Assembly (NCBI RefSeq): GCF_001194135.2
Contig: NC_068983.1
Coordinates: 164,165,235-164,229,234 of the forward strand
Source: Octopus bimaculoides
Taxonomy: Eukaryota
Direction: 5' to 3'
Length of the DNA stretch: 64,000 nucleotides
A program made the position numbers and the translations under genes. The notes beneath the pieces are model-generated. The model did no database searches. It was not told the origin of the DNA and saw nothing but the letters and a program-made list of their open reading frames with translations. Positions 1,096 to 48,774 of the stretch are shown one piece after another; the first letter of the stretch is position 1; each line of letters begins with the position of its first letter.

Positions 1096-1956
1096 TATAT
1101 CTTGAACTTCATTGTTTAACTCATAAACTTTTATTTGAACGATATGGTGCAGCTTAAAGATGATTTAGCTGCTATTTCTTGCAGATCTAACAAAAAATTA
1201 TGCTTTACAGCTGTTCAAGATACATAGCAAAATTTTGCTTTATTTAAAGAAGCGAAAATCTCAAATAAGATATAACTGTCGCTGTCAACAACTTCCCGAT
1301 ACTTTCTGACACAAGACAAAACCAATTCTAAAGATGGAAATTATTCAAAAACATCCGTCACTTAAATGATAACAAATTTGTTAGGAATTGAAATAAATGA
1401 AATAAAATATAAGAAAAAAAAAACAGTGCAGTTTTGTTGAGCGGAAAATAATAATTTGAACAAAAGCAACATTTGGTGTCACTAGCAATTCAGAATCCAA
1501 ATTTTATCTATAGAATTTGTTTTTTTTTTTTAATCTTATAAACTCTCAGACAATTCTGGCAGCTGCCTTTGTCTACCTTTATGAGAATAAAAAAAAGAAG
1601 AAGAAGAAATAGAGAAATAAAGTGCAACTAATGAAGTGTTTAAATATCACATGATTAACAACTTTTGAATAACTATTCAGTGTCATGTTATATTCTGAGA
1701 GTTTAATAAGACCATCACATTTTGTGTGGGACATTGGAATTGGTTATTGAAGAACAAATGTGACAATTAACAGGAAAGGAATATGCTAGAAATGAATGGA
1801 CACCAGAATATTACTAGTATTTGCTTTTTTATTTTCTAGTGTGACAAGTACTACCCAAGTAGAATTTGAAATTAGAATATAGGGAAATGAAAGAACGAAG
1901 TTACGTTTATGAATTTCTGTTGCATGATTCAAAAGTAATGCAACACTTATTTCCTT

Positions 1957-2328
1957 CAAGTAAAACCACCAATAGAAGAGAATATGACCAAAGACTGCGT
2001 GTATTCCATCCCATGCAGCTGTGGTAGGTTATACAAAGGCGAAACATGTCACCCCCTCAAAGTAAGGGTAGACGAACATTGCAAAGCTGTGACAAGAGGA
2101 GATATTGATAAATCGGGTATAGCTGATCATGTATGGAAAAATGGAGACCACCTACTCCTGTGGGATGAAGTTAAAATAATAGACAGAGAACACCACTGGA
2201 AAATACGAAAATTAAAAGAAGCAACACATATGCTAAAACACAACAACCTCCTAAGCAGACCGAGTGCAGATGTGAACAGCATATGGGAACCGGTATTAAG
2301 GAAGGATAGAGAAATATTAGATTTATAA
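1957..2328 (+). mobile_element. Penelope/Poseidon-like retroelement 3' end: GIY-YIG endonuclease
   Basis: ORF has CVYSIPCSCGRLYKGET (VY..IPC.C...Y.GET), R..EH, SGIADH, W...KII..E and R..KEA motifs typical of the PLE GIY-YIG domain; 5'-truncated. Confidence 0.9.
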
Positions 2329-2339
2329 GCCCTAAAATT

Positions 2340-2590
2340 CACTCCATAATTGCATATGGCGTAGTGGTCAAGAGCGCGGGCTACTAGCCCCAAGATTCCG
2401 AGTTCGATTCCAAGCAGTAACCTGAACAATAATAATAATAACATCGAAAAATACCTTAGGAATGAGAACCCAGGTTCGAAATTTCCCTAAGACACCTGAA
2501 GAAGGCTGGAGAGTATATCAGTCAAAACATTGTGTTAACAACAAACAAGATGAGGACAAATATCCGTCAAATGTAAATAATGTAAATAAT
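2340..2590 (+). mobile_element. PLE terminal repeat (pLTR, family F1): tRNA-like A/B boxes, (AAT)n, hammerhead motif
   Basis: Directly follows the GIY-YIG stop. A-box TGGCGTAGTGG 2357-2367, B-box GTTCGATTCC 2402-2411. The same sequence recurs at 6151-6240, 7140-7300, 18078-18113 (-), 47390-47770 (-) and 47771-48175. Confidence 0.8.
2492..2535 (+). ncRNA. Degenerate minimal type-I hammerhead ribozyme motif (F1)
   Basis: ACAC-CTGAAGA-aGGCTG..CAGTC-AAAA-CATT-GTGT; stem I intact; GAAA and the ACGT palindrome are mutated in this copy. Confidence 0.6.
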
Positions 2591-2862
2591 ATACGATTCC
2601 TGATGTCATGTGTTGAAACAGATATTGTATTTCGGAATGGTAATTTATTTATTTATTTATTTTTGCCAAATAAACACATGCACTATAAATTCGTTCCTCA
2701 CTCATTTATTATTGTTCTAATTCTAACTCATGTCCATTGTCTGGGAATCTTTTGTCACACATCTGTGACCTCCTTAGCGACACTTTCCGTTTTCATCTGT
2801 GTTTTTGTTCTGTTTATTCCATTCTAATATAAAGTGTAAATCATGTTAGTTTACTACAATAT

Positions 2863-3540
2863 TGTATTTGAAGTAAAGATTGTTTGCCAACATAACATGG
2901 CAGTACTGGTTTAGGACGAATGTTGCTGTAATTTAGCCCCAGGAGATATCGTCTCCAGCTGGATATACGACACGATCTGTGTCCTTATATTTTTGAACAA
3001 AGGAATCTAGCACCCCTACTCAGTTCAAAAATATAAGGACACAGACAGTGTCGTATAGCCAGCTGGAGACGATGTCTCCTAGGGCTAAATTACAGCAACA
3101 TTCGTCCTAAACCAGGACTGCCACGTTATGTTGGTAAATAATCTTTACTCCAAAATACTGTTGCTGAATATCTCTCGTTACGAGATTTACAAATAGTAAT
3201 TTTCTAATATATAGATCAATGACTAGTTGTGACTTTGAAAACTATATATTTTGAACAGGAATTTGGCAGCACCACCTCTAACCAAACAATTATTCTGTGC
3301 TGATGAAGGGAAATAACCCAGAAATTGCGATACACAGATATTGTTTTGAGTTGAGATTCCCTTGTTTGAAAATATAAGGACACATCGTGTCGTATAGCCA
3401 GCTGGAGACGATGCCTCCTGGGGCAACATTCGTCCTAAACCAGGACTGCTATGTTATGCTGGCAAACAATCTTTACTCCAAAGTACTGTTGTTGAATATC
3501 TCTCATTGTGAGATGTACAATTAGTAATTTCCCAATATTG
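2863..3540 (+). mobile_element. Retrozyme-like non-autonomous PLE (family F2): inverted arm plus about 1.5 tandem copies of a 341-bp unit
   Basis: 2863-2998 is the reverse complement of 3023-3158. TATAAGGACAC recurs at 3032 and 3373 (period 341). A hammerhead lies at 3294-3338, just before the second copy. Confidence 0.8.
3294..3338 (+). ncRNA. Minimal type-I hammerhead ribozyme (F2), predicted cleavage after AUA at 3332
   Basis: TCTGTG-CTGATGA-aGGG aaataa CCCa-GAAA-TTGCGA-TA-CACAGA. Stem I has 6 bp, both conserved core boxes are intact, and stem III is the near-palindrome ATTGCGAT. Confidence 0.8.
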
Positions 3541-3953
3541 TATACTTGTTCCAAAATAACCAAGATTAATCTGCTAAACTAATATCCTTTCTACTATAAG
3601 CACAAAGCCTATTCTGGTGGAGGCAGAGGGTTAGTTGATTACGTCCACCTCAGAGCTCAACTGGTTCTTATTTCAACAATCCTGAAAGGATGAATGGCTA
3701 AGGTGACCTTGGCAGAATTCGAACTCAGAATGTAAAGACAGACAAAATGTTGGGAAGTATTTTGTTCTGTCTGCTAATCGTTCTGCCAGCTCACCACGTC
3801 AATCTGCTAAAGTAATATAGCATTTAATCCATGTACCTTTAAAGATAATCTGATTTAAAACCACAGTGAGATTCTGAGGCAACGGTGGGGCATAAGTACA
3901 TCTGCAGTTAATTTAAGGAAACTATGGTGAATATCTCATTGATTGTTTTAAGT

Positions 3954-4330: not shown

Positions 4331-6150
4331 AATCTTTTTGTTACATTTCTGTTGAACTATAATGTCTTCAATAAACTTTGAAAATAATGAAGACTTTTAT
4401 AAAACACCTTTGTCATTTCGTTTTTGGATTTGGTTTGTAAGATTCTTTATGTGAGTTCGTGTGTTGAAGAATATTCTGTTGTGCCTGGGGAGAGTCATTC
4501 TTCTTTTTGTGCCTTATAATTTAACACACTCACCGGTAAAATTTCCACTCATTTCTTTCTTTATTTTTCCTAAAATTTTCGTTGCGTCTTGCAACCTTTT
4601 CAATAGTTTTGACTCTGTCCGTTATTTACACTGCATTCCTTTCTGTTTGTTTGTGTGCATGTGTGTGGGTCAATGTGTGTGTGTGTGCCTATACATGCAT
4701 GTATGTATGTATGCATGTGTGTGTATGCATGTATGTGTGAGTGTGCATATGTATGTATTTATGTGTGTACATTTGTATGTATGTATTCTGCATATTTATG
4801 TGTTTGCATGTCCGAGTTTGTGTTTTTATGTATGTGCGTGCATGTGTGTGTGTGCTTATATATGTGTGCCTGTACCTCTGTCTCCTTGTGTGTGCATGTC
4901 TGACTCTGTATGTGTATGTGTGTGTGTGTGTGTGTGTGTTTTGCAACTATAAGCTGGTATTTGGTAGACCTTGTTGCTGTGGCCTGGATTGGAACCTGGC
5001 CATAATAATTGGGACAAAAATTGGCTTCAAGTTTTGGCCCCAAACCAGCAATTCCGAGGAAGGGTAAGCCAATTACATCAACCTCAGCGCTCAACTGATA
5101 TGCTCTTTATTGATTCTGACAGGACGAAAGGCAATAATCAACCCTGGCAGCATTTGAACTCAGAATGCAAAATCAGAAGAAATGTCGTGAAACATTTCTT
5201 CCGGCATGCTAACCATTCTGCCAGCTTACCACCCTACTTTGGAACATAAATTAACTGGAAATCTTTGATGGAAAACATTTTAGATCACTTATAAAATAGT
5301 TTGTATCTTACTTCTTGGAGGTGGTCTCAGGCAGCTCCGTTGTGTGACTTTTAGAGGCCTCCTGCAAGTTTTTGCTTCAAGGCCTCATCTCTTCAATCAA
5401 AATTCATAACCTACGCACATTTTATTCATAGCTATATTTTACTTTATTCTATCTGAAGTTCAATATTTCACATTAGCTTAAAGAACATCTTTAAAAGTAC
5501 AACATGGTAAATTTATTTCGGTCTATTACAAATTTCAATAAGTAAAATTTCCAGATATGAATAAAAGAGCACTTTTATAATCCAAGCAACTTTCAAAGAC
5601 AAACATGGTGCACTTTTTGTTTCACGAAATCATCGATCAGTGCAGAATAATCAAGCTAAGAGCCATGTTTGTGTTCAACGGATATCATAGAACAATCCAC
5701 GTTCGTGATGCAATGTAGTATTTTTACAAGAGCTTTTGCAGGTACAATGCATTACCATTTTATTTCTTGAAACTTTCAGATAACATCATCATCATCATCA
5801 TCATCATCGTTTAACGTCCGCTTTCCATGCTAGCGTGGGTTGGACAGTTTGACTGAAGACTGGTGGACCAGGAGGCGACACCAGGCTCCAATAGTTTAAT
5901 TCTTGTTCAACATTTTAACATGGGGTCCCTCAACCACGGAGCCCCCCCCCCCTGTGACTGCAGGGGTTGCAGGGGCTTAGTGNNNNNNNNNNCAACCACG
6001 GAGCCCCCCCCCCCTGTGACTGCAGGGGTTGCAGGGGCTTAGTGATGGCCCTACTCTCAGGTAGGTTTGGTACCGAAAAGATTATAAAACGATCTATATT
6101 TGCAACAGGGAAAAACAGTTGTTTGGTGAGGACCATATATCTTTTAACAA

Positions 6151-6240
6151 GCGTAGGGGTTAAGAGCACGGGCTACTAACCCCAAGATTCCGAGTTCAAT
6201 TCCAGGCAGTGACCTGAATAATAATAATAATAACTCGAAA
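6151..6240 (+). mobile_element. F1 pLTR fragment (tRNA-like head plus AAT repeat)
   Basis: GCGTAGGGGTTAAGAGCACGGGCTACTAACCCCAAGATTCCGAGTTCAATTCCAGGCAGTGACC matches 2359-2422. Confidence 0.75.
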
Positions 6241-6244
6241 AGCA

Positions 6245-6642
6245 CCTGGAGAGCACAGACCTCCACCAAGCAGCTCATTTTAAGATAGATACGCGAAAAA
6301 AATTACTGATAGAGAAACGAAAATAAACTTTAGAAACAGCAACGCCACCATAGGTTAAGTGGAAACGATGAACGTGCTTTCAAGGGAGATAATCAAAGAA
6401 CGTAACATTGTAATACTTCATGTAAAGTAAATATAACAAATGAAAAATCCTTCAAGAATCCATAAAAATTCCCGGATCACTACCAACATTTTCATCATTT
6501 CATCATCTGTTCCTTGTGTCATTACCAACTTTTCCTGCAAGTTTCATCAAATACCGTTCACAACTTTATGAGTTATTTTGCTCACAGACGGACAGGCGGA
6601 CAAACCAACGCCGATGAAAACATAACCTCCTTCCTTGGCAGA

Positions 6643-6744: not shown

Positions 6745-7140
6745 ATGTCCCTTGGGTGCTGATGATCTGTGCACCTCTGATCATGAGCAGAAGTAGTGGG
6801 GGAGCATCATAGCCATGTGTTGAGAGGAATTCTTTGGGGTCTGAATAATTCACCTTTGGAAACATGGGTGTTTTGCTCAATATCCTTAAACAAACCTTAT
6901 TCAGGGACCTTTTAAGCGGAATGGGCTACTCGACCTGCAGAAAATTCTAACTGGGCCCCACCTGCGAGGTCATGCGCTGTTCATCTTGATATGAGATCAC
7001 CATGTCGCGCACATATGGTTGTGATGCATGTGCCTGGTGTACCCTTATCAGACAGGTAGTCATGATGGGTATAATGGGCTTCGTATATTTTACCCCAGTG
7101 TCACTTTGATGGCATGCACTGCTCTCTCACTCAGTAATAA
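6745..7140 (+). repeat. Interspersed repeat ending in a (TAA)n tail, probably a LINE/SINE 3' part
   Basis: Complex GC-richer sequence bounded by AAT microsatellites; family not identified. Confidence 0.4.
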
Positions 7141-7196
7141 TAATAATGTCGGAAAATACATTAGGAATGAGAACCCAGGTTCGAAATTTCCCCAAG

Positions 7197-7240
7197 ACAC
7201 CTGATGAAGGCTGGAGGGTATATCAGCCAAAACGTTGTAT
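7197..7240 (+). ncRNA. Minimal type-I hammerhead motif (F1) within pLTR fragment 7140-7300
   Basis: ACAC-CTGATGA-aGGCTG gagggtatat CAGCC-AAAA-CGTT-GTAT. Core CUGAUGA and ACGT palindrome are intact; GAAA reads AAAA. Confidence 0.65.
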
Positions 7241-7859
7241 TAACAACAAACAAGATGAGGACAAATATCCGTCAAATGTAAATAGTGTAAATAATGTAAA
7301 AAAGCTGAGCATTATTTTGGAGTCATTTTCGAGAATGTCCTCTTTTTGGAGAATGTCCTCTTGAATATCTGTTGGTATACTCAACCACCACATGTGTTCT
7401 TCAATGCCTTCAGTTCTTTCGGCAAAACTGATTTTTGCTGCTTCAAAAATTCCTCTATCTTCAAACTGGGGATAGAACGGTTCCTGGTATAATTTGGCAT
7501 CCATTCTTGAGTTATTCCCATCAAACCAGCATTGAGGACTTCTCAGAGACACAGCAATTATCTGCAGTTTTTTTGTGAAAAATCTAACAAATTCATTCCC
7601 TGGAGGTTTGTGGCTAGACTGACAGCAAAACATTTATGCTACATTTGCTCTGTCTTGGGTTTTGGGACCTGCAAATGTGTGTGTGTGTGTGTGTTCTTGT
7701 GTGTAGGTGGGGGGTATCGTAGTTGTTTCTTGTCTCCTGAATATGTGGTTCTTCCATTGTTGTAATAATGACTAAAACCAAGACAAAGCCCCATCCCCCT
7801 CAACTGGGAGGGCAGAGAAGGATTGAGATGGGGGGTGACTTCGTATCAAACTGAGGGGT

Positions 7860-8700: not shown

Positions 8701-9394
8701 ATTTTGGAGACATCTTAGAACAATGCTTTCCAACCTTCTCCTCACCAAGGAACCTCTTCATTTAAATCAATTTGACTTGACTCAGATTTGGTTTTATTCC
8801 AGGTACAATTTATGTGGGTTGCGGGTTACCACCTCTAACCTTACATATCCACAAGCTTTTGATCATCTTTTCTGTTGCATATGTTGTTCACACATAAAAT
8901 ACAGAACGTAAATAAAAAAGATGCATTTACAAAGAAAACAGAGAATAACAGAAAGGAAACCAAAACCGAGTCCAAAGACTCTATCTGATCTGATATAAAC
9001 GAAATTGTTACAAACACACATATGGACGCACATACTTACATATAAGCACGACCACATAGGTGCATGCACACATATGAGCGTGCACACATACGAACTTGCA
9101 CACACTCACATGCTCATACCGAACAATTTCAAACAATGCCAAATCATACATTCAAAATAAATGGAAGTGGAGAGACAAGTTACTGAAGAGATTGCAAGAG
9201 TGCAATGAAATGATTTAACAAAAAACTATATACTGTTTATAAATTAATAAAGGACTGAATCAGTGCGTGTGTTTATTACCGGCATAATGCCTCTCCCAAG
9301 GTTTAATTGTAATGATAATAATAATAATAATAATAATGATACATTTTGGATACGTTTTATTAGTGTTTTATTATGGTCAAATTTTATAACATAC

Positions 9395-11235: not shown

Positions 11236-12120
11236 CCCACCACCATCACCACCAGTGTCATCATTGTTGTTGTTGTCATCGTCGTCGTTGTCATTGTCAA
11301 CAACAGCAACCAAACAGCAGCAACAGCAACAAGAAGAACAAAAAATGAATCGGTGAAACAAATCTGAAAGTACTTTCAAAAAATTTACTTTTCAAGAATT
11401 TAATTATTTTCTTTCTGATAACAGTTTTGCTTCTGGTAAATTGAGTCTTTTCTGTTCTGTGAAATGTGTGTGTGTGTGTGTGTGTTTGTGTGTATATTTC
11501 TCTGTGTGTTTGTATTTGTGTGTGTGTGTATGTGTATGCATTTGTGTGTGTGCTTGTGTGTTTATGTGTATTTATATATATATATGCATACATGTATACA
11601 CACATACAAATGTATATACATACATATATACATGCATACATTTATATATAATATATACACCTATGCTTCTATGTGTGCTTGTGTGTGTGAATTTATATAA
11701 TGCATAATTATTTGTCTGAGAAAGAGTGGTAGCCATGTTGAGTAGCAGTCACCCTAGACTGAGGGGTGGTGCCGGAATAAAAGGGATAGACTGGCGTTGC
11801 TGATGCTGAATTTGAAATATTGTGGGGCAGCAGGAAGAAGGAAGATGTGTAAAGAAAATGAATTGGAAAGAAATCCAGTTTTGAGAAGAAGAAAGTCTTG
11901 AGTAAAATGTGGCACTGTCTATGGTCTATAGGAATGGATTAGGAATGGATTAGAAATGGATATGGTGACAGAACAAGCAAGTTCAAAGAAATACGTACCA
12001 TTGTATTAGTGTGAGAAAATAAAGAAGGAAAAGCACAAAGGATATTGGGACGATGAACGAAGTAGAGTCCAACACTTTTAATGTTCAGAATTGTTGAAGC
12101 ATAAAATAAACAACCTAGTC

Positions 12121-19324: not shown

Positions 19325-19377
19325 ATATATATATGTATGTATGTATATGGTGAAATGATGCATATTTTTAATCTTAC

Positions 19378-21050
19378 CTATCAAGATCATACCAAGATCG
19401 AATTTTCTTTGCTGACCCAGGTTCAGAACCATCAAAAGATAGATCACTGCTTTCAAAGACAGAACATAAATTACGTACAACGGTGTTATGTTCTTCGTCA
19501 GTGTTTGGTGAATATTCCAGTTGTTCTGGAGAAAACAGATTTGAAAATTCCTGTGCTTTTGAAGTGTTTGTTAGATTTAAGTTTTGAGATGCAATTGTTG
19601 GAGTTCTTGAAAATTCCAAAGAAGAATTGTTTGTCTCTGATATATTTGCTGTGTCTTGAGAATCTTTGCTGTTTGACATATTTTTATTCCTTTTGTAGAT
19701 TTTAGTTGGTGAGAAGACAGGTGTGGCAACTTTTAAAGTGTCACTAGATGGTTTAGCATTTGCAAGGAAGAAGTTGTAAGGAGTATGAACCCAACGTGGG
19801 TGGTCTGGGTTACCAAATAAGGGTTTGACATCAGGAGATTTTCTGTTAAAGCGCCATTTAAAGTAAGGATCATGAGATAGAGTTTTGTTTCCTGAAAGGC
19901 TATTAAGGTTTGCTCTTTTGCTTGAGTTACTTTCAGACCATTTAGAAGCAGAACCAATCAGGGAGTCATGAGAATTCCACCTTTTCCCCATGCCAAAAGG
20001 GCTCTTCAATGATTCCAAAGAATTTAGAGGCTTGAAGACTTCCTCCATATCTGACGTTAGTGCTAAATCCTCAGCTGATGCCTGATGAGAGAAGTTTTGG
20101 GGAGAACATGGAACACTCCGTACCTTTCTTGGAAAATTGCTAAAATGACTCTTTGATAAACTTTGATCTACATTTACATTGTCAGGTGTATTTTTCACAT
20201 TTTTGAGAATTCCTTTTAAGGCCGACCCTTGCTTTGCTGACCTATTTTCAGTCTGTTTAGTGAAATTAAATGTCACATTATTTACTCTCTGTCGATTCGA
20301 TGCTCTAGAAGGTTCTTCAAAAGATGAAAAACTGTTCCTTGATGGCAAACTAGGAGAACTAAAAAGATTACGCCTATCTTGTTCTTCTCTATTACTAATT
20401 TCATTATCTGAAATTAATTGATTCAGTTGTTGATCACTCCAGTACAGTCGTTGATATTTGTTTTGCTGACCCAGCTGATATTTATTTGGATTAAAATCTT
20501 GGATTATTTTCGAAGTATTTCCATTCTTATTAACCATCATATTTTCAAAATTAGAGGCCAAATTGTCAGCTGCGTTTTCTCTGCTTCTCCAAATGTTTTG
20601 AGAAAAACCTACATCACTTTTATCAGTGTGATTTCTATCTACTTGGGATAGACAAGACATTGTACGATATAATTTTGGTGTCTCTGGACATTTTAGATTT
20701 CTGTCCTGTCCATCAACTACAGGACTTAAATGGAATGGAAAAGTGGACAGAGACTGACGAGTTGGACTGCTTGTTTTAGGAGTCATTGATTTATAGTTTT
20801 CAATGAGATATGGATTAGAAAAAGCCACCTCATCTATATTTGCATGAGATCTTGACAGGTAAAATCCATCACTTTTAAAAGATTGATCTAAATCCATGCT
20901 GTTCAGTTTCAGAGCCTTCCTTTGCTGCCAAAGTAGAGTTAATTCCTCTGATAAGATCTGTTTATCATATTCAGTCTTCAGAATTTGCTCTTGCAGTTCA
21001 TTAAGGACTTTCTCAACTCCTTTCTGATAATCTTTTAGTTCCGTTACATC
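19378..21050 (-). CDS. Large coding exon (1673 nt, phase 0-2) of the same gene
   Basis: Acceptor tttttcttctcctctttaag|GATGTA at 21050, in frame with the 507-aa ORF 19374..20897 (adds 51 codons, [22 protein letters not shown]..., continuing the coiled coil). Strong donor GATAG|GTAAGA at 19378 overlaps the apparent stop codon. Confidence 0.85.
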
Positions 21051-21247
21051 CTTAAAGAGGAGAAGAAAAATTAATATTCATATTAGTAATTATTAAATTT
21101 ACATATGAGCAAAAGAAATTAAAATAGTCATCTGTGTATCATACCTAATATACATACAACATTGAAAGGCACGATGCTGTGGTCTTTGAAAATAAAGATA
21201 ATATATTTCTAAATCTCTTAGAGAGATTTATGTAGTAGCAGCACGAT

Positions 21248-21508
21248 AAAGAGATAGTATGTTGTCAACTTAATGTGACAGTCCCATGAAAGGGAAGAAT
21301 GCTACTGTTACTTAGCCCTAGGAAACACCGTTTCTTGTTGGACTTGACCCATATCCTGTGTCCTGTGTCCTGTCTCCACTTTTAAAACATAATGACACAG
21401 GAGATGGGTCAAGTCTAACAGGAAACGGTGTTTCCTGGGGCTAAATAACAGTAGCATTCTTCCCTTTCATGGGACTGTCTCATTAAGTTGACAACATGCT
21501 ATCACTTT
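21248..21508. repeat. Long fold-back inverted repeat (arms about 115 bp), related to the F2 unit
   Basis: 21248-21362 pairs with 21394-21508. The right arm aligns by eye with 3037-3150 (shared GGGCTAAAT.ACAG, GGACTG). Confidence 0.85.
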
Positions 21509-22787
21509 GCTGTGGTTTTTGTCTGAAAGGAAAAAATCTCTTTATAGACATTGTATTAAAAACACAATAGAAAACAAGGCAAATACCATCTCAACAACAT
21601 CTCACGAGAGCATCAGATAACTTCAGCCTTTTTTGACCTTGTCAATGATATGTACTTGTTTGTTACATGAAATTCACCCCTCTGAGGAAACAGTGGATAA
21701 TGCATTCACTGATATTGTGGAAAGTTTGCTGGTCTGAAATAAAGTTGGTGTACGCAATTGAAACTGCATTAAATCAAATAACTATCTCTGTGCTATACAT
21801 AGTGTATATACGCCATTGAAAGGTATGTTGCAGTGGTTTTGTATGAGAGAAAAATCTCTTCATGTATTACAAACACAATATATATTGGTTTCCAATTTTG
21901 GTACAAGGTCAGCAATTTTGGGGTAAGAACTAAGTCAATTACATTGAGGTCAATAATCAATTGGTACTTATTTTATCAATCCCAAAAGGATGAAAGTCAA
22001 AGCTGACCTCAACGGCATTTGAACTCAGAACAAAAAGACAGACAAAGTGCTACTAAGCATTTTGCCCAGAATGCGGAAGATTTTGCCAGAGCATCTGCCT
22101 TAAACACAATATATATTGGAGTGAGAGGAACATTTACATGGCAGGGATTCACAAGAATGTTAGATTCCCTTTTGCTTTCTTGGGCCAGTGTTTTCTTATA
22201 TATCAGAGGAATCCATCTGCCTCTTTTTTTTTTTTCTCATGAGGTCAACAATCAATTAAAAAATCTTTTGATGGCAACAATCGAAAATGACTGAAATACA
22301 AAAATTAAATTAGCAAAAAAAAAAAAAAATGAAGAAAATAAAAAAACACAGAGATAAATATACTCACATAAATAAATGCAGACATACATTCACACACACA
22401 TAAAGTTTGATAAAAAGATTTCTATCATAATTAGAATATACCAATAAAATAATTTTGTTGTTTTACAGTTAAAACGCCATCACCATCATCATCGTCGTCA
22501 TCATCATCACCATCATCGTTGTCGTCGTCGTCATCGTCGTCGTCATCATCATCATCATCATCATCATAATTTAACATCCATTTTCCATTCTGGGGTGGGT
22601 CAGACAGTTTAACAGAAACTGACAAGGTGGAGAGCTGCACCAGGCTCCAGCTGTCTGTTTTTTGGCTTGGTTCCAATGGGTGGATGCCCTTCCTAACACC
22701 AACCATTTTACAGAGTGCACTGGGTGCTTTTTACATGGTACCATCTTACATTAAAGTTGCATTATTCAATGTGCAGAAAAGTATCAT

Positions 22788-27320: not shown

Positions 27321-27845
27321 TACATATTATATGTTTATACACATTCATTATTCCTTACACAAGAATATCATTTACCGTGATTCAATGATGGCTTAACTTG
27401 CCATGACTTCGAAGTCACTGTCAATATTATTCTAGTTTAAGAATAATAAATTATTACCCTATGAAATTATAGAGTAAACCAACGAATTAAGGTAAAATTG
27501 TTTTTATAATTCAAAATAAATACAAACAGAAAGATATATTTTTCAACAGATAAATACTGAAAGAACAGCCTTTGTAGAACAAAATCCTTACAGAGCAGAA
27601 AAATCTGTCAGCAAGCAACAACAGATTTTCCCGCTTTGTAAGGATCTTTTTCTACATGTGCTGTTCTATCAGTACTTATGCATTGAAAGATATATCCTTC
27701 TTTGTGTACTACAATACATTTCAGCGCTTCAAAACAAAAGAAACAAACAGACAGATGTTAGTTTACATATGACATAAATACAAACATTTATATAACTATA
27801 TATATGCATATGTATACAACTATTATTATAATTTATGATACAAAC

Positions 27846-30800
27846 CTCTTTTAATTCAAAGGATTCTTCTTGAACCATCTCCAGTTCCTCTTTTAATACA
27901 ATGTTCTCCTGTTGAAGAAAAACAATATCAATTCCTGTTATGCTTGTCTGGCTTTCTTGGGCAGTTTTCTCAACATCATACTTCTTCAATTTCTCCAACT
28001 TCTCAAATTCGATTCGCAGATTATGGGTTTCTGTCTTCTCAAGTTGTAAACTTTCTTTTAGATTTTCAATTTCTTGTTTTAATTGTTTAAATATTAGATA
28101 AATTCTATCAGAAATGTTTTCTTTAAAACAAGTATACTTCTCTAGTAAGTTCTGAAATTCTTGATTGTTGGCACTTGAAGAAATCACTTTTAAAAACGTT
28201 TCTTTGAAATGTTGATTATTATCATTCATCTCGTCATCCTCAGCAGCTGTGTCACTTCTGGAATTTCTGTGTGGATTTTTGCAATTCATACGACAGAGGC
28301 TACACTGGTGGAGGTTATGTCCATCCTTGTTCAAAGAATCATATTTTGTTCCTTTCATTACTAAATCTTTACAATTATCTTCAAGATTTCTTATATTTGA
28401 AGATGTTAGAGAATGGTAAATTGTTCCATTCGAGGATTCAGTTCTTTTAGGAGATGAGTTTTCTCTCAGCAGTGGAGAATCTTTAGTTTGATGGTTTATT
28501 TTACTAATTAAAGAATTTGGTGAATCCGTACCACAAGAATAGTTTGAAACTTTGGTATTATTACCATTCAGTTTGAAATTCGAATGTTCTTCTGTTTTAA
28601 TAGTTTTATAATAGTCTGTTCTAGTCCAAGGTTTCCAGAGATGACCTCTCCTTAAAGGCGAAACATTAGACGAAAAAGGAGAGTAACTCTCACTTGGACG
28701 AAAAATTTTATTGCTTTCTTGTAATGTGTTATTACTTGACTGAAATGTTGAATGTTCCGGTTTTATTTGCTGTTCGGTCATTTTTTTACCATCATTAACA
28801 ACTTGCTGGTGCTTGGAATTTTCCAAAGAGTTAATTAATGAAGGCTGGTTTTTATTCTGTTCCTGTAATCTTCCTGTACTCAAATTAAAATCAGTTTTAT
28901 TAATGCTGGAAGTAGTTGAAAGCTGACAATCACCAGTCGGGGAATTTCCTGGTATCTCCACACTTTGTACAGTGTCTTCAAATGAAGAATTAGAATTGTT
29001 CAATGATGTTCTTCCAGTTTCCATAGCATTCACTTTTTCCTTAAGTTTTCCAATTTCTTCACAAAGAAATTCAATCTTCTCTGATGTAAGTCCCGATGGA
29101 TGTTGCTTGTTAAAACCATCTTGAGAATTCAATTTGACTGTGATTACTTTACCAGTCTGATTTTCCGGAACTTCAGTACATCTATCATGATTACCATTAT
29201 TTAATGCTTCATCAAGACATATTGGCTGACCAATATTTTCTTTACCTGTTCTATCTTTAATAGAATTTCCCTGATTCACATTTATACAAGGTGCCAAGTA
29301 AATTCCGTCGACTATTTCCCCGTCATGTTGGTAATGAGGAAATGGCTGTGATAGAGTTGATGTTTTGCTAGAAATTTTAAAGGGTAAAAACGTAGGCAAG
29401 TACTGTTGGGGAGAGGGTGGAAAGGGTGGAGGAGATGTTAAAGGTGGAGTTGGCGGCACAAGTTTATCTTTTACACTTTCTTGGACAATGCCCCCATTAG
29501 TCTGTTCTGTGTCATTGTTAGTCAAAAGAATCTGATTTTCTGAACATGATGGCAAATTTGAACTTTGATTAAAAGAATGATTTTCGAATGATAAAAGAGG
29601 GGAAGCCACCTGGGAAATGGGAGCAGGTAATTCGGTGCTTTGCAGGAGAAAAACTTTTTTACATGTGTATATTCCATTATCATTAGAAGATGCATCTTTG
29701 ACAGATGCAGCAATATCTGAAGATGTTACCGTGAGAGAACTGCTAACATCATTATTTCTCATTGAAGATGTTTTCTTTAAATCAGTGAACTGTCTATCTG
29801 AAGAAGATTGCTTTCCATTCTCTTCAGATCTGGGAGAATAACTTAGCAAGTATTTTTCAGAATATCCTTCAGTTTGTTGATTCCTGCTAACGTCTGTTGC
29901 AGGATTTTTACTCAGTTGTAATGTTGAATAGGAATAAAAATAGGGGCTTGATGGTGAGTTTAAGGCATTCTTTTGGCAAGCCTGTGTTTCTGGCCAAAGA
30001 TCTCCTTCATGAATGGAAGAATAACTCAGTGTCAGACCAGATTCTGTCTTTGTTGACATTCCACTATTTTCTGTCATTGTCGTTGTTGTTGCTGTTGTTG
30101 TTGTTGTTGTGAGTGGAAAGGATGATGATGACGATAATGATGATGATAGTGATGAAGAAGATGGTGGTGATAATGATCTAGATGACATTAGCTTCTCTCT
30201 TGTTGATGATGATGATGATGTCAGTATAGGTAGAACTAATGTAGACACCATGGTTTGTTTTGTTAAACCTGAAGATGTTTGAAGACTGTTAATTGTTGAA
30301 GGTGAACAACTGTTAACGGTCGTGCAGGCAGTGTTAATGATGCCAGTCGATATGTTACTCACTCCTGTCGATGGATGATCACTGAGAGCTGTAGATGTTA
30401 TTTTACTGCTGAATACAGGTTCAGTATCATACGCAGTAGTCGTCTGGGTCGTATCGGCCATTTTAGAGGGAGAAATATTGAGAGACTTGGATGTAACATT
30501 GCTGGTATTTGTTGATAAAATTTGGCTGTTATTTTCTGACAGTGACTTGTCGTAAGATGGGGGGGATTTACTGGTATTGTTGATGTTAGTTGTTGGTTTT
30601 GACTTAAATGCTGTAGCTGGGTAGACAGACCCCCTTGGGACAGGACTCTCCTTACCATCCGTGGTCGATGAAGCATCAAAGAATTTCGATCTTTTTCCAT
30701 AACTCTGGCTAAAAGAAACATCATTTATTGCTTTTTGTGCCGGTTCATTGGCGTTAGTAGACAAAGTGGGAGTCGTACTTGAAGAGAAGAAATTCTTAAT

Positions 30801-30926
30801 ATTTGGAGCATTCCTATTTTGGAAAATGCTTTTGTCTGAAGTATTCCTCGGAGTTGGAGAAGACAGTTTGTGGGTTGATAAGTAGCTCAATTGCTTTCTT
30901 GGAGAATTGTAGGATTTATTTTTAAC
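27846..30926 (-). CDS. Large internal coding exon (3081 nt, 1027 codons, phase 0-0) of an uncharacterised Ser/Thr/Asn-rich protein; coiled coil begins at its C-terminal end
   Basis: Part of the stop-free 1124-aa ORF 27729..31103. Polypyrimidine tract and acceptor ttttcttcag|GTTAAA at 30926; donor GAG|GTTTGT at 27846; length divisible by 3; ends with heptad-like IFKQLKQEIENLKESLQLEK...LKEELEMVQEESFELKE. Confidence 0.87.
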
Positions 30927-31269
30927 CTGAAGAAAATAAAAGAAAAAAGTCATATTAAACAGGATTGTTATGAAAATAAAAGAAGGCATTACCATTCTTG
31001 TTATAACCATTGTTGTTATCATCTTTGTCACCGTTGTCATTGCCATAAACATTGACGTCATCGTCATCGTCATTATCATTGTCATCATCATCATCATCAT
31101 CAACGCTTCCTTTCCTCCCCCTCCCCTCCCCCACCCCCATCATTAGTCATAAGAATCATTATTTCCATTTCACTTCTCAGAGCTCTCGATTTTTACTTGA
31201 TTCTGTGAGAGCAGACAGCAACCTGCTGTCAGGGCTTTCAAAAGGTCTCTCTCTCCCCAATACCTAAAG

Positions 31270-33528: not shown

Positions 33529-34340
33529 TGTTGTAATCTGTGAATGTTATAATGCCCAGTCTGGTATAACAGTATAGTTACTAAAACAAGTAAGACCATG
33601 ACTCTCTATGACTGTCTCCTTCCTATACTCCTCTTATACTGACCGATGTCACCTTATTTATAGTGACAAGCACATACCACTCATCACGTGGGATGTCAGA
33701 AGGTATTTTTGGGGAGGACATAATTACTGTAATGCTCATGTTCTCCTTCTGCCAGTTTCCCCAAGATTAAACGCCTTTTCATATCATCATCCCAATCTTT
33801 GCACTCTTTTTTGAAGGTTTGTTCGTATCTTCTACAGGAAACCTCGAAGGTGACTCCTTTATCTGGTTTGTACTTAAACTCTGTTATTGAGTTTGCAACA
33901 TAATCTGGCAAGAACATTTTTTCAGCATTTTCTGACGATTTACTATCCATTAATTGCAGCATTTGTTGCTGTAATAGTAATTGCTGTTGTTGTTGCTGCT
34001 TCTGTTTATGTTCTTGCAGTTGTAGCTGCCGCTGTTGTTGCTCTTTTAGTTGTTGTTGCTCTTTTTGCAACTTGAGCAAACCAACCAGCAAATTTTCCAT
34101 AATTTTACGATTTTTCTTTCCAGAAAATTTGCACAAAAAAACCAAATATTTGTGAGTTTGTTAAATTCATGTTGCCATTGTTGTAATCCTTAACGTTGGA
34201 TTGTTTTAACACCTACTCTGGTATAGCTGTATAGTTGTTAAACCATGACTCTCTATGACTATCTCCTTCATACTTTCCCCTTATACTGACTGATGTCACC
34301 TTATTTATAGTGACTAGCACATACCACTCATCACGTGGGA
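33529..34340 (-). mobile_element. Miniature, internally deleted Ty3/Gypsy LTR retrotransposon: LTR - PBS - gag 5' part - LTR
   Basis: Direct repeats 33529-33693 and 34179-34340 both begin TGTTGTAATC on the plus strand (end in ACA on minus). PBS-like ATGGCAACATG at 34178-34168. Gag fragment ANSITEFKYKPDKGVTFEVSCRRYEQTF...RLILGKL..EHEHYSNYVLP. Confidence 0.8.
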
Positions 34341-36591: not shown

Positions 36592-37491
36592 GTATGTATA
36601 TACAATAAGCTTCTTTCAGTTTCCATTGACCAAATCCACCCACAAGGATCATTTGGCCAAGGGCTTTAGCAGAAGACACTTGCCCAAGGTACAACACTGT
36701 GGTACTAAACCCAAGACCATGTTTCTTTACCTCACAGCCATGCTTGTAACAAGCGTCATGCACCTTTTGGAGGCAGAAATTGGCATGTCTTCCCTAAGGA
36801 CTGCTTCTTTAACTGAGGCTGATGAATACCTTACATCAGACCTTTCATCAAAACCCCTTTCTTGTGCTTTTCGTTGCTTTCTTTCATATGGTCCTTCCCA
36901 AGATTCTCTCGGTACTTATACCTGTTGTTATTTTTTGAGAGCAAATACAATTTTAAAGGAGAGATACTCAGCTGTCATTCTGCTCCATCTAAAACTTGTT
37001 TTTTCCATGGAACCTGAATAACAGTTCTGCATTCTGACACAAGAACAGTAATTTTGGGGGTAGGGGTCAGTCAATTACATTGGCCCCAATACTTATTTAC
37101 AACAAAATCAACTCTGAGGGAATTTGTTGTTTAAATGTAGAAATAGACAAAATGTTGGTAAGCATTTTTGCCCAGCATGTTAATGATTCCGCCAGGATAC
37201 CACCCAACTCAAGCCAAAGAGCTCCAATTTTATAAGCTGTCTCTCACCCAACAAGTACCGATATTCTTCAGTTGTTGTAGAACAGTATTAAGATTGTGAA
37301 TCTTACTCAGACTAAGAAGATTCTTTGCCACTTAACAATTTTGAAGTTCCTCAACCTGCTCTTCTCTTTCAAGACAGAAGAGGTTAGCGGCAGTGCATGA
37401 CTATTGATCAAAATGATGCTCTTTCTTTAGAAGTTGCATTCAACAAAAACAACAACAGCAAAAGTAATCATTATCAGTATTATTATTATTA

Positions 37492-42261: not shown

Positions 42262-42410
42262 AGTAACTGGTACTTTATTCATCGACCCCGAAAGAATGAA
42301 AGGCAAAGTTGACCTCAGCGGAATTTGACCTCAGAACGTAAAGACAGATGAAATACCGCTAAGCATTTCACCCAGCATGCTAACGTTTCTGCCAGCTCCT
42401 CGCCACCTTA
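42262..42410 (+). mobile_element. SINE family C (CORE/MIR-like segment)
   Basis: ACTGGTACTTTATTCATCGACCCCGAAAGAATGAAAGGCAAAGTTGACCTCAGCGGAATTTGA motif; also at about 3598-3800, 5010-5235, 21885-22100, 37040-37200 and 63740-63960. Confidence 0.7.
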
Positions 42411-47022: not shown

Positions 47023-47481
47023 GACAGGCCTTTTTCAGTTTCTGTCAACCAAATCCACTCACAAGGCTTTGGTTGGCTTGAGTCTATAGTAGAAAACACT
47101 TGCCCAAGATGTAATGCAGTAGGATCGAACCCAGAACCATGTGGTTGGCAAGTGAAGTTCCTGCCATACAACCACATTAAGATATTCGAGAATGTTTTGG
47201 TATTTTTTGTCAGTTCATTTAGATTATTCCTCACTTAACTACAAACTTCCTAATCCACACTTTAAAAGAGTTTTACCTATAAATATTCACTAAATAAATA
47301 TTTACTTTCCTGTGTAAGGATTATAAAGAAATAACACCTGTTAGATGATTTGTATTAAGCTGATGCAGAACCAAAGGTAAGGCTTTAAGCAAGTCAATTC
47401 CAGTTCTATATTTAAGAGGTGAGAAATTATGTTCATTATTTACATTTGATGGATATTTGTCTTCATCTTGTTTGTTGTTAA

Positions 47482-47524
47482 CAAAACATTTTGGCTGATA
47501 TACCCTCCAGCCTTCATCAGGTGT
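47482..47524 (-). ncRNA. Degenerate hammerhead motif (F1)
   Basis: Minus strand ACAC-CTGATGA-aGGCTG..CAGCC-AAAA-TGTT-TTGT. Confidence 0.55.
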
Positions 47525-47606
47525 CTTGGGAAAATTTTGAACCTGGGTTCTCATTCCTAAGGTATTTTTTGATGTTGCTTTTCTTCTTCTTCTTCTTCTT
47601 CTTCTG

Positions 47607-47722
<116 letters not shown>

Positions 47723-48084
47723 CATTATTATTATTATTATTATGATTCGGGTCACTGCCTGGAATCGAACAAGATGAGGACAAATATCCGTCAAATGTAA
47801 ATAAATGTAAATAATGTAAATAATGTACATAATTCCTCATCTCTTAAATATAGAACTGTATTATCTAATCGGTACGGATCCGACATTAGACTTCAATGGA
47901 GACATATAGAGAAACTCCATCAAAAACTAGCTCGTCTTTCAAACCATCTAACTTTCCTGTGTAGATGTAAAGATTCCAGGCAGTGACCTGAATAATAATA
48001 ATAACAATAATAATAATAATAGTAATAATAATAACATTGAAAAATACCTTAGGAATGAGAACTTAAGTTCAAAATTTCCCCAAG

Positions 48085-48120
48085 ACACCTGATGATGGGA
48101 ATATCAGTTGTAACGTTGTA
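48085..48120 (+). ncRNA. Heavily decayed hammerhead motif (F1)
   Basis: ACAC-CTGATGA retained and ACGTTGTA retained; stem II partly deleted. Confidence 0.4.
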
Positions 48121-48774
48121 TAAACAACAAACAAGATGAGGACAAATATCTGTCAAATGTAAATAATGTAAATAAAGTCAATTTCACTTTCACAAGGAAT
48201 AAGTATTGATTCCATGTTGAAGCCATTTCCTAGCAGCAGCTTACATAAATTCTGTTGCTTTACACAACTCCATAAATGATATACAGTGATATAAGAGGCT
48301 GACATCAGAACTGGAGAGATTGGACATTGGAACTATAAAGATGCAAGAAATTACGGATTGATTTGCTTCAAACACACAGGGACTGATTGATATATTGGGA
48401 TCATAGAATGATTGATTGATATATTTGGGGATCATAGAATGGATAAAGGATTAAATAAGATGTTGACCGCCTGGTTGAAAATGTCATGTGTTCATTACAG
48501 GAAGGAAAGCGAAATTAAAAGCCTAAACAGTTTTCAGTTCTATATTTCTACTTTATGGGTTCGAATCCCACTTGATCTAACTTTCTAGTTGTTTTTTTAC
48601 TTGTTTCAGGCATTGGGCTATGGCCATGCTGGAGTACTGCTTTGAAGGGTTATAAACAAACCAACACCAGTTGAGAAACAGTGAGAGGCAACAAACACAA
48701 GCATAAAGACATACATATACACATATATATATGATCACACTCACACACACAAACATACACACACATATATACAT

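What the first reader, a model, noticed from the sequence alone, without database searches (positions are those of the whole stretch)
2863..3540. Retrozyme-like element: 341-bp tandem unit with an intact minimal hammerhead and an inverted 5' arm
Seen: a 341-bp period (TATAAGGACAC at 3032 and 3373), a complete type-I hammerhead at 3294-3338 (6-bp stem I, CUGAUGA, GAAA, near-palindromic stem III ATTGCGAT, AUA site), and an inverted copy at 2863-3010 whose inner end corresponds to sequence about 15-20 nt downstream of the predicted cleavage site. Established: Penelope-like elements and non-autonomous retrozymes carry minimal type-I hammerheads with palindromic stem III that can cleave as dimers, and PLE insertions often have an inverted terminal repeat at the 5' end. 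Inference: this is a non-coding ribozyme retroposon that could yield roughly 341-nt linear or circular RNAs. Whether this family is already described I cannot check.
Basis: partly seen in the sequence, partly recalled or inferred. Interest (0 to 1): 0.85.

Follow-up and report, generated by a model that had tools for sequence, protein, structure and literature searches.

The report
Old hammerhead-carrying short retroposon insertion in octopus
This is a decayed single insertion of a short non-coding mobile element in an octopus genome, with a hammerhead-ribozyme motif and the inverted-plus-tandem layout typical of Penelope-like retroelements: a new example of a known kind that cannot itself release a 341-nt circular RNA.

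Summary
There is a 341-nt period (3023-3363, then 3364-3540), an inverted copy at 2864-3008, and a full hammerhead (HHR) core at 3294-3338.

What I added:
- An 11-bp target-site duplication (CAATATTGTAT, 2857-2867 and 3533-3543) brackets the whole structure.
- The three copies differ pairwise by 11, 11 and 10 of 123 sites, a star pattern. One insertion event therefore made all three, and they then drifted about 4.5% each.
- A roughly 70%-identical relative at 21189-21507 (minus strand) has its own 14-bp duplication and a paralogous empty site. It shares the same 3' end, the same outer end of the inverted copy, and 5' junctions just 3' of the predicted cleavage site.
- The real element is about 330 nt (3211-3540). 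It is preceded by a 5'-truncated direct copy and an inverted 5'-truncated copy, which is the published insertion scheme of Penelope-like elements (PLEs).

Caveats:
- There is only one HHR at the locus.
- An unpaired A sits on each side of the base of helix II.
- Rfam gives no hit, and I could reach no other HHR-bearing copy, so covariation is untested.

Verdict: a relic of a PLE-dependent, retrozyme-like retroposon. It is a new member of a known kind, of moderate to low interest.

The parts
2857..2867 (.). Left copy of the 11-bp target-site duplication CAATATTGTAT. Its last 4 nt overlap the inverted copy (microhomology).
   Evidence: An exact 11-mer sits at both junctions; 9 of 3000 random junction pairs in this window do as well.
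2864..3008 (-). Inverted 5'-truncated copy covering unit positions about -10 to 136. With a gapped match it may continue to 3022 (position about -24).
   Evidence: 92% complementary to 3023-3154; 2978-3008 pairs with 3354-3384.
3009..3022 (.). 14-nt junction between the inverted and direct copies. It is either filler or a diverged continuation of the inverted copy.
3023..3210 (+). Upstream direct copy, 5'-truncated, containing only the 3' domain (pseudo-LTR-like). It ends at the family's 3' terminus.
   Evidence: The locus-2 3' end and the locus-1 3' end (3540) both align to 3210.
3065..3079 (+). Conserved hairpin GGAGAC-GAU-GUCUCC. Locus 2 has GGAAAC-GGU-GUUUCC, a compensatory G-C to A-U change. 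Two further hairpins downstream also each hold one compensated pair.
   Evidence: pairs at columns 52-60, 92-99 and 106-119.
3211..3363 (+). 5' domain of the one full-length copy. 3211-3339 is single-copy in all the data I could reach, and this domain holds the HHR.
3294..3338 (+). Type-I hammerhead motif, with predicted cleavage between A3332 and C3333. Helix I is 6 bp plus a 6-bp extension (3285-3290 with 3340-3345). Helix II is GGG/CCC with loop AAAUAA and an A.A mismatch at its base. Helix III is 2 bp plus tetraloop UGCG; AUUGCGAU is self-complementary.
3364..3540 (+). 3' domain of the full-length copy, with an 11-nt deletion relative to unit 1. It ends at the element's 3' terminus.
3533..3543 (.). 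Right copy of the target-site duplication CAATATTGTAT. Its first 6-8 nt could equally be the element's own 3' end.
21189..21507 (-). Related element (locus 2), about 70% identical over the 3' domain. The main copy is 21189-21375 on the minus strand, and the inverted 5' copy is 21379-21507. It has no HHR region.
21175..21188 (.). Locus-2 target-site duplication TGCTGTGGTCTTTG. Its partner is at 21508-21521 (TGCTGTGGTTTTTG). An uninterrupted paralogue of the target lies at about 21826-21842.
1948..2593 (+). Context, a separate insertion: a 5'-truncated PLE-like fragment (ORF 1984-2328) whose 3' tail holds a decayed PLE-type minimal HHR at 2492-2536.

Best explanation
The region 2864-3540 is one old insertion of a short (about 330-340 nt), non-coding retroposon. 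It was most likely mobilised in trans by the reverse transcriptase and endonuclease of a Penelope-like element (PLE).

The full-length copy is about 3211-3540. Its roughly 150-nt 5' domain carries a type-I hammerhead. Its roughly 190-nt 3' domain carries conserved hairpins and a fixed 3' end. In front of it, the same insertion event laid down a 5'-truncated direct copy (3023-3210, pseudo-LTR-like) and an inverted 5'-truncated copy (2864-3008/3022).

Shown:
- a single event, from the target-site duplication and the star-like divergence of the three copies
- retroposon-type duplications of variable length (11 and 14 bp)
- a repeated architecture in a second, diverged family member.

Inferred:
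- In the active family, the hammerhead cut transcripts at A|C (3332|3333), probably as a dimer through the self-complementary helix III, and so set the RNA's 5' end. All four copy 5' junctions in the two loci fall roughly 8-45 nt 3' of that site.
- Reverse transcription started at the fixed 3' end.
- A template switch or snap-back near the RNA 5' end made the inverted copy.

This locus is a neutral relic, about 4.5% diverged per copy. That is very roughly 10-15 My on the O. vulgaris transposable-element clock. It has a single HHR, so it cannot release a unit-length linear or circular RNA.
For: - Repeat anatomy.
- Target-site duplication: 11 bp exact, with 0.3% of random junction pairs doing as well.
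- Star phylogeny: 11, 11 and 10 differences over 123 shared sites, with 6, 5 and 5 private changes.
- Second locus: a 14-bp duplication, a paralogous empty site and the same breakpoints.
- HHR core and helices. Chance expectation is 0.03-0.05 per window, and 0 of 1200 simulated windows once helix III must be self-complementary.
- Fold predictions: helices I and II have pair probabilities of 0.8-0.99 in the monomer. The dimer minimum-energy fold is the double hammerhead, at -25.3 against 2 x -7.5 kcal/mol. The unit-length RNA is more structured than shuffles, z = -3.8.
- Non-coding: there is no ORF with homologues. GC is 36%.
- Published architecture: partial tandem plus adjacent inverted 5'-truncated copy, with HHRs in the pseudo-LTRs (PMC8557442; PMC4209133).
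- PLEs are present in this genome. A fragment with a PLE-type minimal-HHR tail lies 270 nt upstream, and active PLE families are reported in O. vulgaris (PMC13282606).
- Precedent for the helix II defect: axolotl HHR_Amex2 has a U.U mismatch at the base of helix II and a helix III of 2 bp plus tetraloop, yet still cleaves, better as a dimer (PMC7229834).
Against: - The HHR region exists once in everything I could read, so there is no covariation or conservation test.
- An extra unpaired A lies between C11.1 and G12, giving an A.A mismatch at the base of helix II. Published PLE and canonical motifs do not list this feature.
- No Rfam hammerhead hit, even at E<=10 on a 91-nt slice.
- A covariance model built from the neighbouring PLE-tail HHRs does not score the motif.
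- No 3'-end similarity to the only PLE fragment available, so the autonomous partner is unidentified.
- No copies in 116 kb of other cephalopod DNA or in the metagenome, viral and prokaryote collections.
- The junctions lie roughly 8-45 nt from the cleavage site, not at it.
Confidence: 0.6

Rival explanations
1. The retroposon and its PLE-type insertion are as described, but the hammerhead-like motif is fortuitous or was never catalytic. The element would then be an ordinary SINE-like, PLE-dependent repeat. Its 5' junction cluster would reflect a template-switch hot spot (a short internal inverted repeat around 3338-3376) rather than ribozyme cleavage.
For: - No Rfam hit.
- Non-canonical base of helix II.
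- Single occurrence, with no covariation available.
- The relaxed descriptor gives about 0.2 chance hits per window, and one such weak hit exists at 9179-9219.
- The junctions are not exactly at the cleavage site.
Against: - The full motif with a 6-bp helix I and self-complementary helix III appeared in 0 of 1200 simulated windows.
- Restricted to this 341-nt unit, the chance expectation is about 2e-4.
- It sits on the sense strand, immediately 5' of the junction cluster, in an element class known to carry exactly this ribozyme.
Confidence: 0.22
2. It is a retrozyme in the strict sense. The family lives as tandem arrays with an HHR in each unit. HHR cleavage plus ligation by a tRNA ligase gives a 341-nt circular RNA, and the 1.5 direct units arose by rolling-circle reverse transcription of that circle started at a fixed internal site (position about 188).
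For: - More than one unit was copied in a single event.
- The unit size, low GC and HHR type fit metazoan retrozymes (PMC7229834).
- The unit-length RNA is strongly structured.
- Both loci share one 3' end.
Against: - No array with two or more HHRs was seen.
- Locus 2 is a sub-unit-length copy lacking the HHR region.
- The 5' junctions cluster, which suggests a linear template with a defined 5' end rather than a circle.
- A partly processed linear multimer explains the same data.
- No expression data are available.
Confidence: 0.3
3. It is an inherited foldback element or a DNA-level palindrome. The inverted repeat would be part of the element itself (a hairpin SINE or MITE-like element), or would have arisen by replication or repair error, and was not made during retroposition.
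For: - The two diverged loci share the same inner and outer ends of the inverted copy.
- The long hairpin draws sub-threshold microRNA-precursor matches in Rfam.
Against: - Within each locus the arms are 92-93% alike, while the loci are about 70% alike.
- In locus 1 the inverted-to-direct distance equals the direct-to-direct distance. The arms were therefore made anew at each insertion.
- There are no terminal inverted repeats, and the duplication length varies (11 and 14 bp), which argues against a DNA transposon.
Confidence: 0.08
4. It is simply the pseudo-LTR and terminal region of an autonomous PLE, with no dedicated non-autonomous element involved.
For: PLE insertions are mostly 5'-truncated and carry HHRs in their pseudo-LTRs. 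A PLE fragment lies 270 nt upstream.
Against: - Successive 3' ends (3210 and 3540) are only about 330 nt apart, which leaves no room for an ORF.
- There is no sequence similarity to the neighbouring PLE fragment or its tail. That fragment ends at 2593 in its O. vulgaris counterpart too.
Confidence: 0.05

Closest known systems
Metazoan non-LTR retrozymes (Cervera and de la Pena 2020, PMC7229834; Li et al. 2026 preprint 10.64898/2026.07.22.740005)
   Same: Non-coding unit of about 340 nt, within the reported 170-400 nt range. Low GC (36%). Type-I HHR on the sense strand. Target duplication longer than 4 bp. Link to PLEs.
   Different: Only 1.5 units and one HHR are present here. No array was seen and no RNA evidence is available. 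An inverted 5' copy is part of the insertion. Octopus and cephalopods are not mentioned in those papers.
PLE pseudo-LTR hammerheads and the PLE insertion architecture (PMC4209133; PMC8557442)
   Same: Partial tandem plus an adjacent inverted 5'-truncated copy. 5' truncation. HHR with a short self-complementary helix III and an unpaired nucleotide between A9 and helix II.
   Different: No RT/EN ORF lies between the repeats. Helix I is long (6+6 bp), helix II is short (3 bp), and there is an extra A before G12. PLE minimal HHRs have a short helix I and a long helix II. No similarity to the PLE-tail HHR family next door.
Amphibian satellite/retrozyme hammerheads (newt satellite 2; axolotl HHR_Amex2, PMC7229834)
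   Same: Helix III of 2 bp capped by a tetraloop. A mismatch at the base of helix II. Expected to work better as a dimer. Unit size of 330-350 nt.
   Different: The mismatch here is A.A, not U.U. Loop-loop tertiary contacts were not assessed. The phylum differs. Activity is untested.
Non-autonomous PLE derivatives such as MRC1 of Chlamydomonas (described in PMC8557442)
   Same: Short non-coding elements that form pseudo-LTRs and head-to-tail insertions and depend on a PLE.
   Different: Those share their 3' ends with known autonomous families and belong to a clade lacking canonical HHRs. Here the partner is unknown and an HHR is present.
L1 twin-priming 5' inversions (own knowledge: Ostertag and Kazazian 2001)
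   Same: An inverted 5' segment made during target-primed reverse transcription, with microhomology at the junctions (GTAT in locus 1, GCTG in locus 2).
   Different: Twin-priming breakpoints are scattered. Here two independent insertions share the same breakpoints to within a few nt.

Membership tests
Hammerhead ribozyme, type I | Conserved core CUGANGA ... GAAA ... U-H at the cleavage site | tested here: met
   CUGAUGA at 3300-3306, GAAA at 3321-3324, U3331-A3332|C3333.
Hammerhead ribozyme, type I | Three helices with helix I open (type-I topology) | tested here: met
   Helix I is 6 bp plus a 6-bp extension. Helix II is 3 bp. Helix III is 2 bp plus a tetraloop, or 8 bp in the dimer.
Hammerhead ribozyme, type I | G10.1-C11.1 pair directly adjoining the core (PLE motifs allow one unpaired nt on the 5' side only) | tested here: not met
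   One unpaired A lies on each side (A3307, A3320), so an A.A mismatch sits between the core and GGG/CCC. The nearest precedent is the U.U mismatch of axolotl HHR_Amex2.
Hammerhead ribozyme, type I | Score above the Rfam gathering threshold for a hammerhead model | tested here: not met
   No hammerhead match at gathering score or at E<=10. Rfam at gathering score also misses the intact PLE-tail HHR in L001, so this is weak negative evidence.
Hammerhead ribozyme, type I | Compensatory changes in helices across family members | not testable with these tools
   No second copy of 3211-3339 in the window, in 116 kb of cephalopod loci, or in the collections scanned.
Hammerhead ribozyme, type I | Site-specific self-cleavage | not testable with these tools
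   Needs in vitro transcription of monomer and dimer constructs.
Metazoan non-LTR retrozyme | Tandem repeats of 150-450 bp, from dimers to multimers | tested here: inconclusive
   1.5 direct units with a 341-nt period. Tandem Repeats Finder reports no array.
Metazoan non-LTR retrozyme | HHR in each unit, with at least two consecutive HHRs for an active element (Li et al. 2026 criterion) | tested here: not met
   One HHR only. Unit 2 ends at 3540, before its HHR, and locus 2 has none.
Metazoan non-LTR retrozyme | Non-coding, low GC, no LTR/PBS/PPT | tested here: met
   GC is 0.36. The longest stop-to-stop frame is 76 aa and has no homologues.
Metazoan non-LTR retrozyme | Expressed as unit-length linear and circular RNA | not testable with these tools
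   No transcriptome access.
PLE-type insertion / PLE-dependent non-autonomous element | Partial tandem (pseudo-LTR) plus an adjacent inverted 5'-truncated copy | tested here: met
   Locus 1 has the inverted copy, a truncated direct copy and a full copy. Locus 2 has the inverted copy and a truncated direct copy. The scheme is described in PMC8557442.
PLE-type insertion / PLE-dependent non-autonomous element | Made in one event and flanked by a target-site duplication of variable length | tested here: met
   Duplications of 11 bp and 14 bp, an empty-site paralogue for locus 2, and star-like divergence in locus 1.
PLE-type insertion / PLE-dependent non-autonomous element | 3'-end similarity to an autonomous PLE of the same genome | tested here: not met
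   No similarity to the only PLE fragment or tail available. The rest of the genome could not be searched.
PLE-type insertion / PLE-dependent non-autonomous element | 30-40 bp 'tail' extension at one end | tested here: inconclusive
   Only a 14-nt junction segment (3009-3022) is unaccounted for.

The most novel reading that the evidence does not exclude
The inverted 5' copy is made by a programmed step, not a random one. Two insertions from subfamilies about 30% diverged share three features:
- the same 3' terminus, to the aligned base
- the same outer end of the inverted copy, within about 6 nt
- inner junctions within roughly 8-45 nt of the hammerhead cleavage site.

This would fit a model in three steps. 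HHR cleavage sets the RNA's 5' end. The cDNA then snaps back at a short internal inverted repeat. The GIY-YIG endonuclease resolves the hairpin at a fixed site. If that is right, these small elements would give a sequence-level handle on how PLEs build their tandem and inverted termini, which is still unexplained, and would assign a concrete job to the PLE and retrozyme hammerhead.
Probability: 0.2. Interest if true: 0.55.

Novelty: new member of a known kind. Interest (0 to 1): 0.35.

Why it matters
Hammerhead-bearing, PLE-dependent short retroposons (animal retrozymes) are established in cnidarians, bivalves, arthropods and amphibians. The retrozyme and PLE-hammerhead papers I read do not describe such a family from octopus, and a recent O. 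vulgaris repeat annotation lists 893 unclassified SINE families without mentioning ribozymes. This locus suggests that some of those unclassified repeats are PLE-dependent ribozyme elements.

The more useful point is mechanistic. The three copies were demonstrably made in one event, and a diverged relative repeats the same breakpoints. That constrains models of how PLE machinery generates inverted and tandem termini, and where the hammerhead acts.

As a single locus it is a dead relic with no evident function.

Tried and rejected
- **Rfam.** I searched the whole window at gathering score, then 2800-3600 and 3270-3360 at E<=10. There was no hammerhead hit. The only matches were sub-threshold microRNA-precursor models (MIR158 at 39.5 bits against a gathering score of 67, among others), which simply score the long hairpin made by the inverted arms. 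I rejected these as artefacts.
- **Protein search with unit ORFs.** I concatenated stop-to-stop ORF translations of the unit and searched the protein database, hoping to fish out miscalled ORFs on other copies. Nothing scored E<=1.
- **Exact-pattern scans.** I scanned metagenome contigs twice, and viral contigs and prokaryote genomes once each, for the conserved 5' motif and the HHR. There were no matches.
- **Other cephalopod DNA.** I fetched 116 kb around homologues of the neighbouring ORF (L001-L007). It holds no copy of the element.
- **Locating the source assembly.** The window's own ORF is not on record, so the source assembly could not be found. The exon-like ORF's best match is 82% identical.
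- **Session-built covariance model.** Model R1, built from the PLE-tail HHRs, recovers four tails in the window but not 3294-3338. The model is too sequence-specific to be informative here.
- **Confirming the upstream ORF as a GIY-YIG endonuclease.** Pfam and PDB sequence searches gave no hit. The AlphaFold model has pLDDT 50, so I did not run a fold search. The assignment rests on the motif VYSIPCSCGRLYKGET..R..DEH and on the HHR-bearing 3' tail.
- **tRNA scan.** Nothing found.
- **A composite of element plus adjacent SINE.** I rejected this. The SINE-like repeat occurs six times in the window and lies on opposite sides of the two elements relative to their orientation.

Full report
**Source and setting.** The window is AT-rich (36% GC) and full of microsatellites, SINE-like repeats and N gaps. 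An ORF just upstream of the finding (1984-2328) is 85% identical to a hypothetical protein of Octopus vulgaris. An exon-like ORF is 82% identical to a protein from a transcript-sized (≤2 kb) Logan contig and 31-33% identical to a cuttlefish protein. The window therefore comes from an octopod genome. The exact assembly is not in the collections I could query.

**Observation.** All the stated features are present.
- TATAAGGACAC sits at 3032 and 3373.
- Unit 1 (3023-3363) is followed by a partial unit 2 (3364-3540) at 83-88% identity with an 11-nt deletion.
- The segment 2867-2998 is 92% complementary to 3023-3154. The inverted copy runs on to 3008, which matches 3354.
- The motif at 3294-3338 reads UCUGUG / CUGAUGA / A-GGG-AAAUAA-CCC-A / GAAA / UUGCGAU / A|CACAGA.

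**Chance level of the motif.** A descriptor of my own found this motif plus one weak hit at 9179-9219 in the window. The descriptor required CUGANGA, helix II of at least 3 bp with up to one unpaired nt on each side, GAAA, U-H, and helix I of at least 4 bp.
- Markov-1 simulations give about 0.18 relaxed hits per window.
- With helix I of at least 6 bp they give 0.03-0.05 hits per window.
- Requiring in addition a self-complementary helix-III segment, no hit appeared in 1200 simulated windows.

**Predicted folds.**
- In the monomer, helices I (with a further 6-bp extension, 3285-3290 pairing with 3340-3345) and II are predicted with pair probabilities of 0.8-0.99. The 2-bp helix III is not predicted.
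- Two copies co-fold into the double hammerhead with an 8-bp intermolecular AUUGCGAU helix, at -25.3 against 2 x -7.5 kcal/mol.

**Weak points of the motif.**
- One unpaired A on each side separates GGG/CCC from A9 and G12.
- Rfam returns no hammerhead, even at E<=10 on a 91-nt slice.
- Only one HHR exists at the locus.
- Tandem Repeats Finder sees no array.

**One insertion event.** An exact 11-mer, CAATATTGTAT, flanks the whole structure at 2857-2867 and 3533-3543. Only 0.3% of equally spaced random junction pairs in this window match as well. Over the 123 columns present in all three copies, the pairwise differences are 11, 11 and 10, with 6, 5 and 5 private changes and no three-way sites. 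This is a star phylogeny. The inverted copy and both direct copies were identical at one moment and have drifted about 4.5% each since. On the O. vulgaris transposable-element clock (JC 0.09 at about 25 My, PMC13282606), that is very roughly 10-15 My.

**A second family member fixes the element's ends.** A relative at 21189-21507 is about 70% identical over roughly 130-190 nt.
- It interrupts a roughly 315-nt tandem repeat.
- It is flanked by TGCTGTGGTYTTTG at 21175-21188 and 21508-21521, and an uninterrupted paralogue of the target lies at about 21826-21842.
- Alignment shows its main copy on the minus strand. Its 3' end aligns to the same base as locus 1's 3' end (3540, equivalent to 3210 in unit 1).
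- Its inverted copy ends within about 6 nt of the locus-1 inverted copy's outer end (unit position about 136).
- Its two 5' junctions lie at unit positions about -10 and +10. In locus 1 they lie at about -10 to -24 and at +1.

The element proper is about 3211-3540: a 5' domain with the HHR, then a 3' domain. The segment 3023-3210 is an upstream 5'-truncated copy, and 2864-3008/3022 is an inverted 5'-truncated copy.

All four 5' junctions lie roughly 8-45 nt 3' of the predicted cleavage site 3332|3333. Three hairpins in the shared 3' domain each show one pair compensated between the two loci, for example GGAGAC/GUCUCC against GGAAAC/GUUUCC. This suggests an RNA structure under constraint, although only two lineages are compared.

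**Mechanism.** The layout is the published signature of PLE insertions, whose pseudo-LTRs typically hold hammerheads (PMC8557442; PMC4209133). That signature is a full copy preceded by a partial tandem copy and an adjacent inverted 5'-truncated copy, with target duplications of variable length. Successive 3' ends are only about 330 nt apart, and no frame has homologues, so the element is non-autonomous.

I infer three steps:
- transcription from a multimeric source
- inefficient, probably dimer-dependent, HHR cleavage that defines the RNA 5' end
- target-primed reverse transcription from the fixed 3' end by a PLE enzyme, with a template switch or snap-back near the 5' end creating the inverted copy.

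Within each locus the arms are much more alike (92-93%) than the two loci are to each other (about 70%). In locus 1 the inverted-to-direct distance equals the direct-to-direct distance. The arms are therefore generated at each insertion rather than inherited. That leaves the shared breakpoints unexplained by random twin priming and is the most interesting loose end.

**Neighbourhood.** The region 1948-2593 is a separate, 5'-truncated retroelement fragment. Its ORF carries VYSIPCSCGRLYKGET..R..DEH, which I recognise from memory as PLE GIY-YIG-like. Pfam, PDB and a low-confidence AlphaFold model did not confirm this.
- Its roughly 167-nt 3' tail recurs at 7132-7298, 47426-47592 (minus strand) and 48023-48175, and in O. 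vulgaris.
- The tail consensus holds a textbook PLE minimal hammerhead: ACAC-CUGAUGA-A-GGCUG...CAGCC-GAAA-CG-U-U|GUGU. It is intact in L001 at 11878-11925. Helix II covaries, GGCUG/CAGCC against GGCCG/CGGCC, in another cephalopod assembly.
- In the three full-length window tail copies (2492-2536, 7197-7241, 47480-47524) it is decayed by a G12-to-A change at a CpG; the fourth (about 48085-48122) is disrupted by a 7-nt deletion in helix II.
- This shows that PLEs with ribozymes populate this genome. The fragment shares no sequence with the finding and is separated from it by 270 nt of unique DNA.

**Comparison and verdict.** The element works like an animal non-LTR retrozyme or PLE-dependent short retroposon (PMC7229834; preprint 10.64898/2026.07.22.740005). 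Its HHR most resembles amphibian and invertebrate type-I motifs with a helix III of 2 bp plus tetraloop. Axolotl HHR_Amex2 even has a mismatch at the base of helix II and still cleaves.

Strict membership as an active retrozyme fails at this locus, which has one HHR and 1.5 units. HHR membership is supported by the core and helices but not by Rfam or covariation. None of the retrozyme or PLE-HHR papers I read mentions octopus in this context.

I rate it a new member of a known kind, with interest 0.35.

Noticed in passing
window 1948-2593 (+); tails also at 7132-7298, 47426-47592 (-), 48023-48175; L001 10068-10648 and 11825-11991: A 5'-truncated PLE-like fragment (ORF 1984-2328) whose 3' tail carries a PLE-type minimal hammerhead. 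The three full-length window tail copies (2492-2536, 7197-7241, 47480-47524) have G12-to-A at a CpG; the fourth tail (about 48085-48122) instead has a 7-nt deletion in helix II. An intact copy lies at L001 11878-11925. Helix II covaries between octopus and another cephalopod assembly. Rfam, run at gathering score on L001, misses the intact copy there.
   Followed up: yes
window 21122-21880: A roughly 315-nt tandem repeat ('X') interrupted by the locus-2 element. Its uninterrupted copy at about 21776-21880 serves as an empty-site paralogue. I found no hammerhead in it.
   Followed up: partly
window 9179-9219 (+): A second hammerhead-like motif (GUUA-CUGAAGA-G-AUUGCA..UGCAAU-GAAA-UGAU-U|UAAC). 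It is single-copy with a helix I of only 4 bp. It is probably chance, since about 0.18 such hits are expected per window.
   Followed up: partly
window 3590-3800, 5061-5232, 21957-22064, 37134-37203, 42265-42398, 63828-63909: A SINE-like repeat of about 170-210 nt at 73-77% identity. One copy lies next to each of the two elements, but on opposite sides relative to element orientation, so the adjacency looks coincidental.
   Followed up: partly
window 2864-3154 and 21248-21508: The inverted arms form hairpins of about 115-145 bp. If transcribed, these could feed small-RNA pathways. They draw sub-threshold microRNA-precursor matches in Rfam.
   Followed up: no
window 2359-2456 and 6151-6247: A segment that looks tRNA-derived by eye (GAGTTCGATTCC, a B-box-like string) followed by an (AAT)n run, shared at 89% identity. 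ARAGORN calls no tRNA. It may be a SINE head fused to the PLE-type tail.
   Followed up: no
window 33696-34145 (-); 19374-20897 (-); 27729-31103 (-): One ORF matches Pfam DUF7083 (E = 1.6e-12). Two long exon-like ORFs have no Pfam domain. The 507-aa one is 82% identical to a protein from a transcript-sized (≤2 kb) Logan contig and 31-33% identical to a cuttlefish protein.
   Followed up: partly
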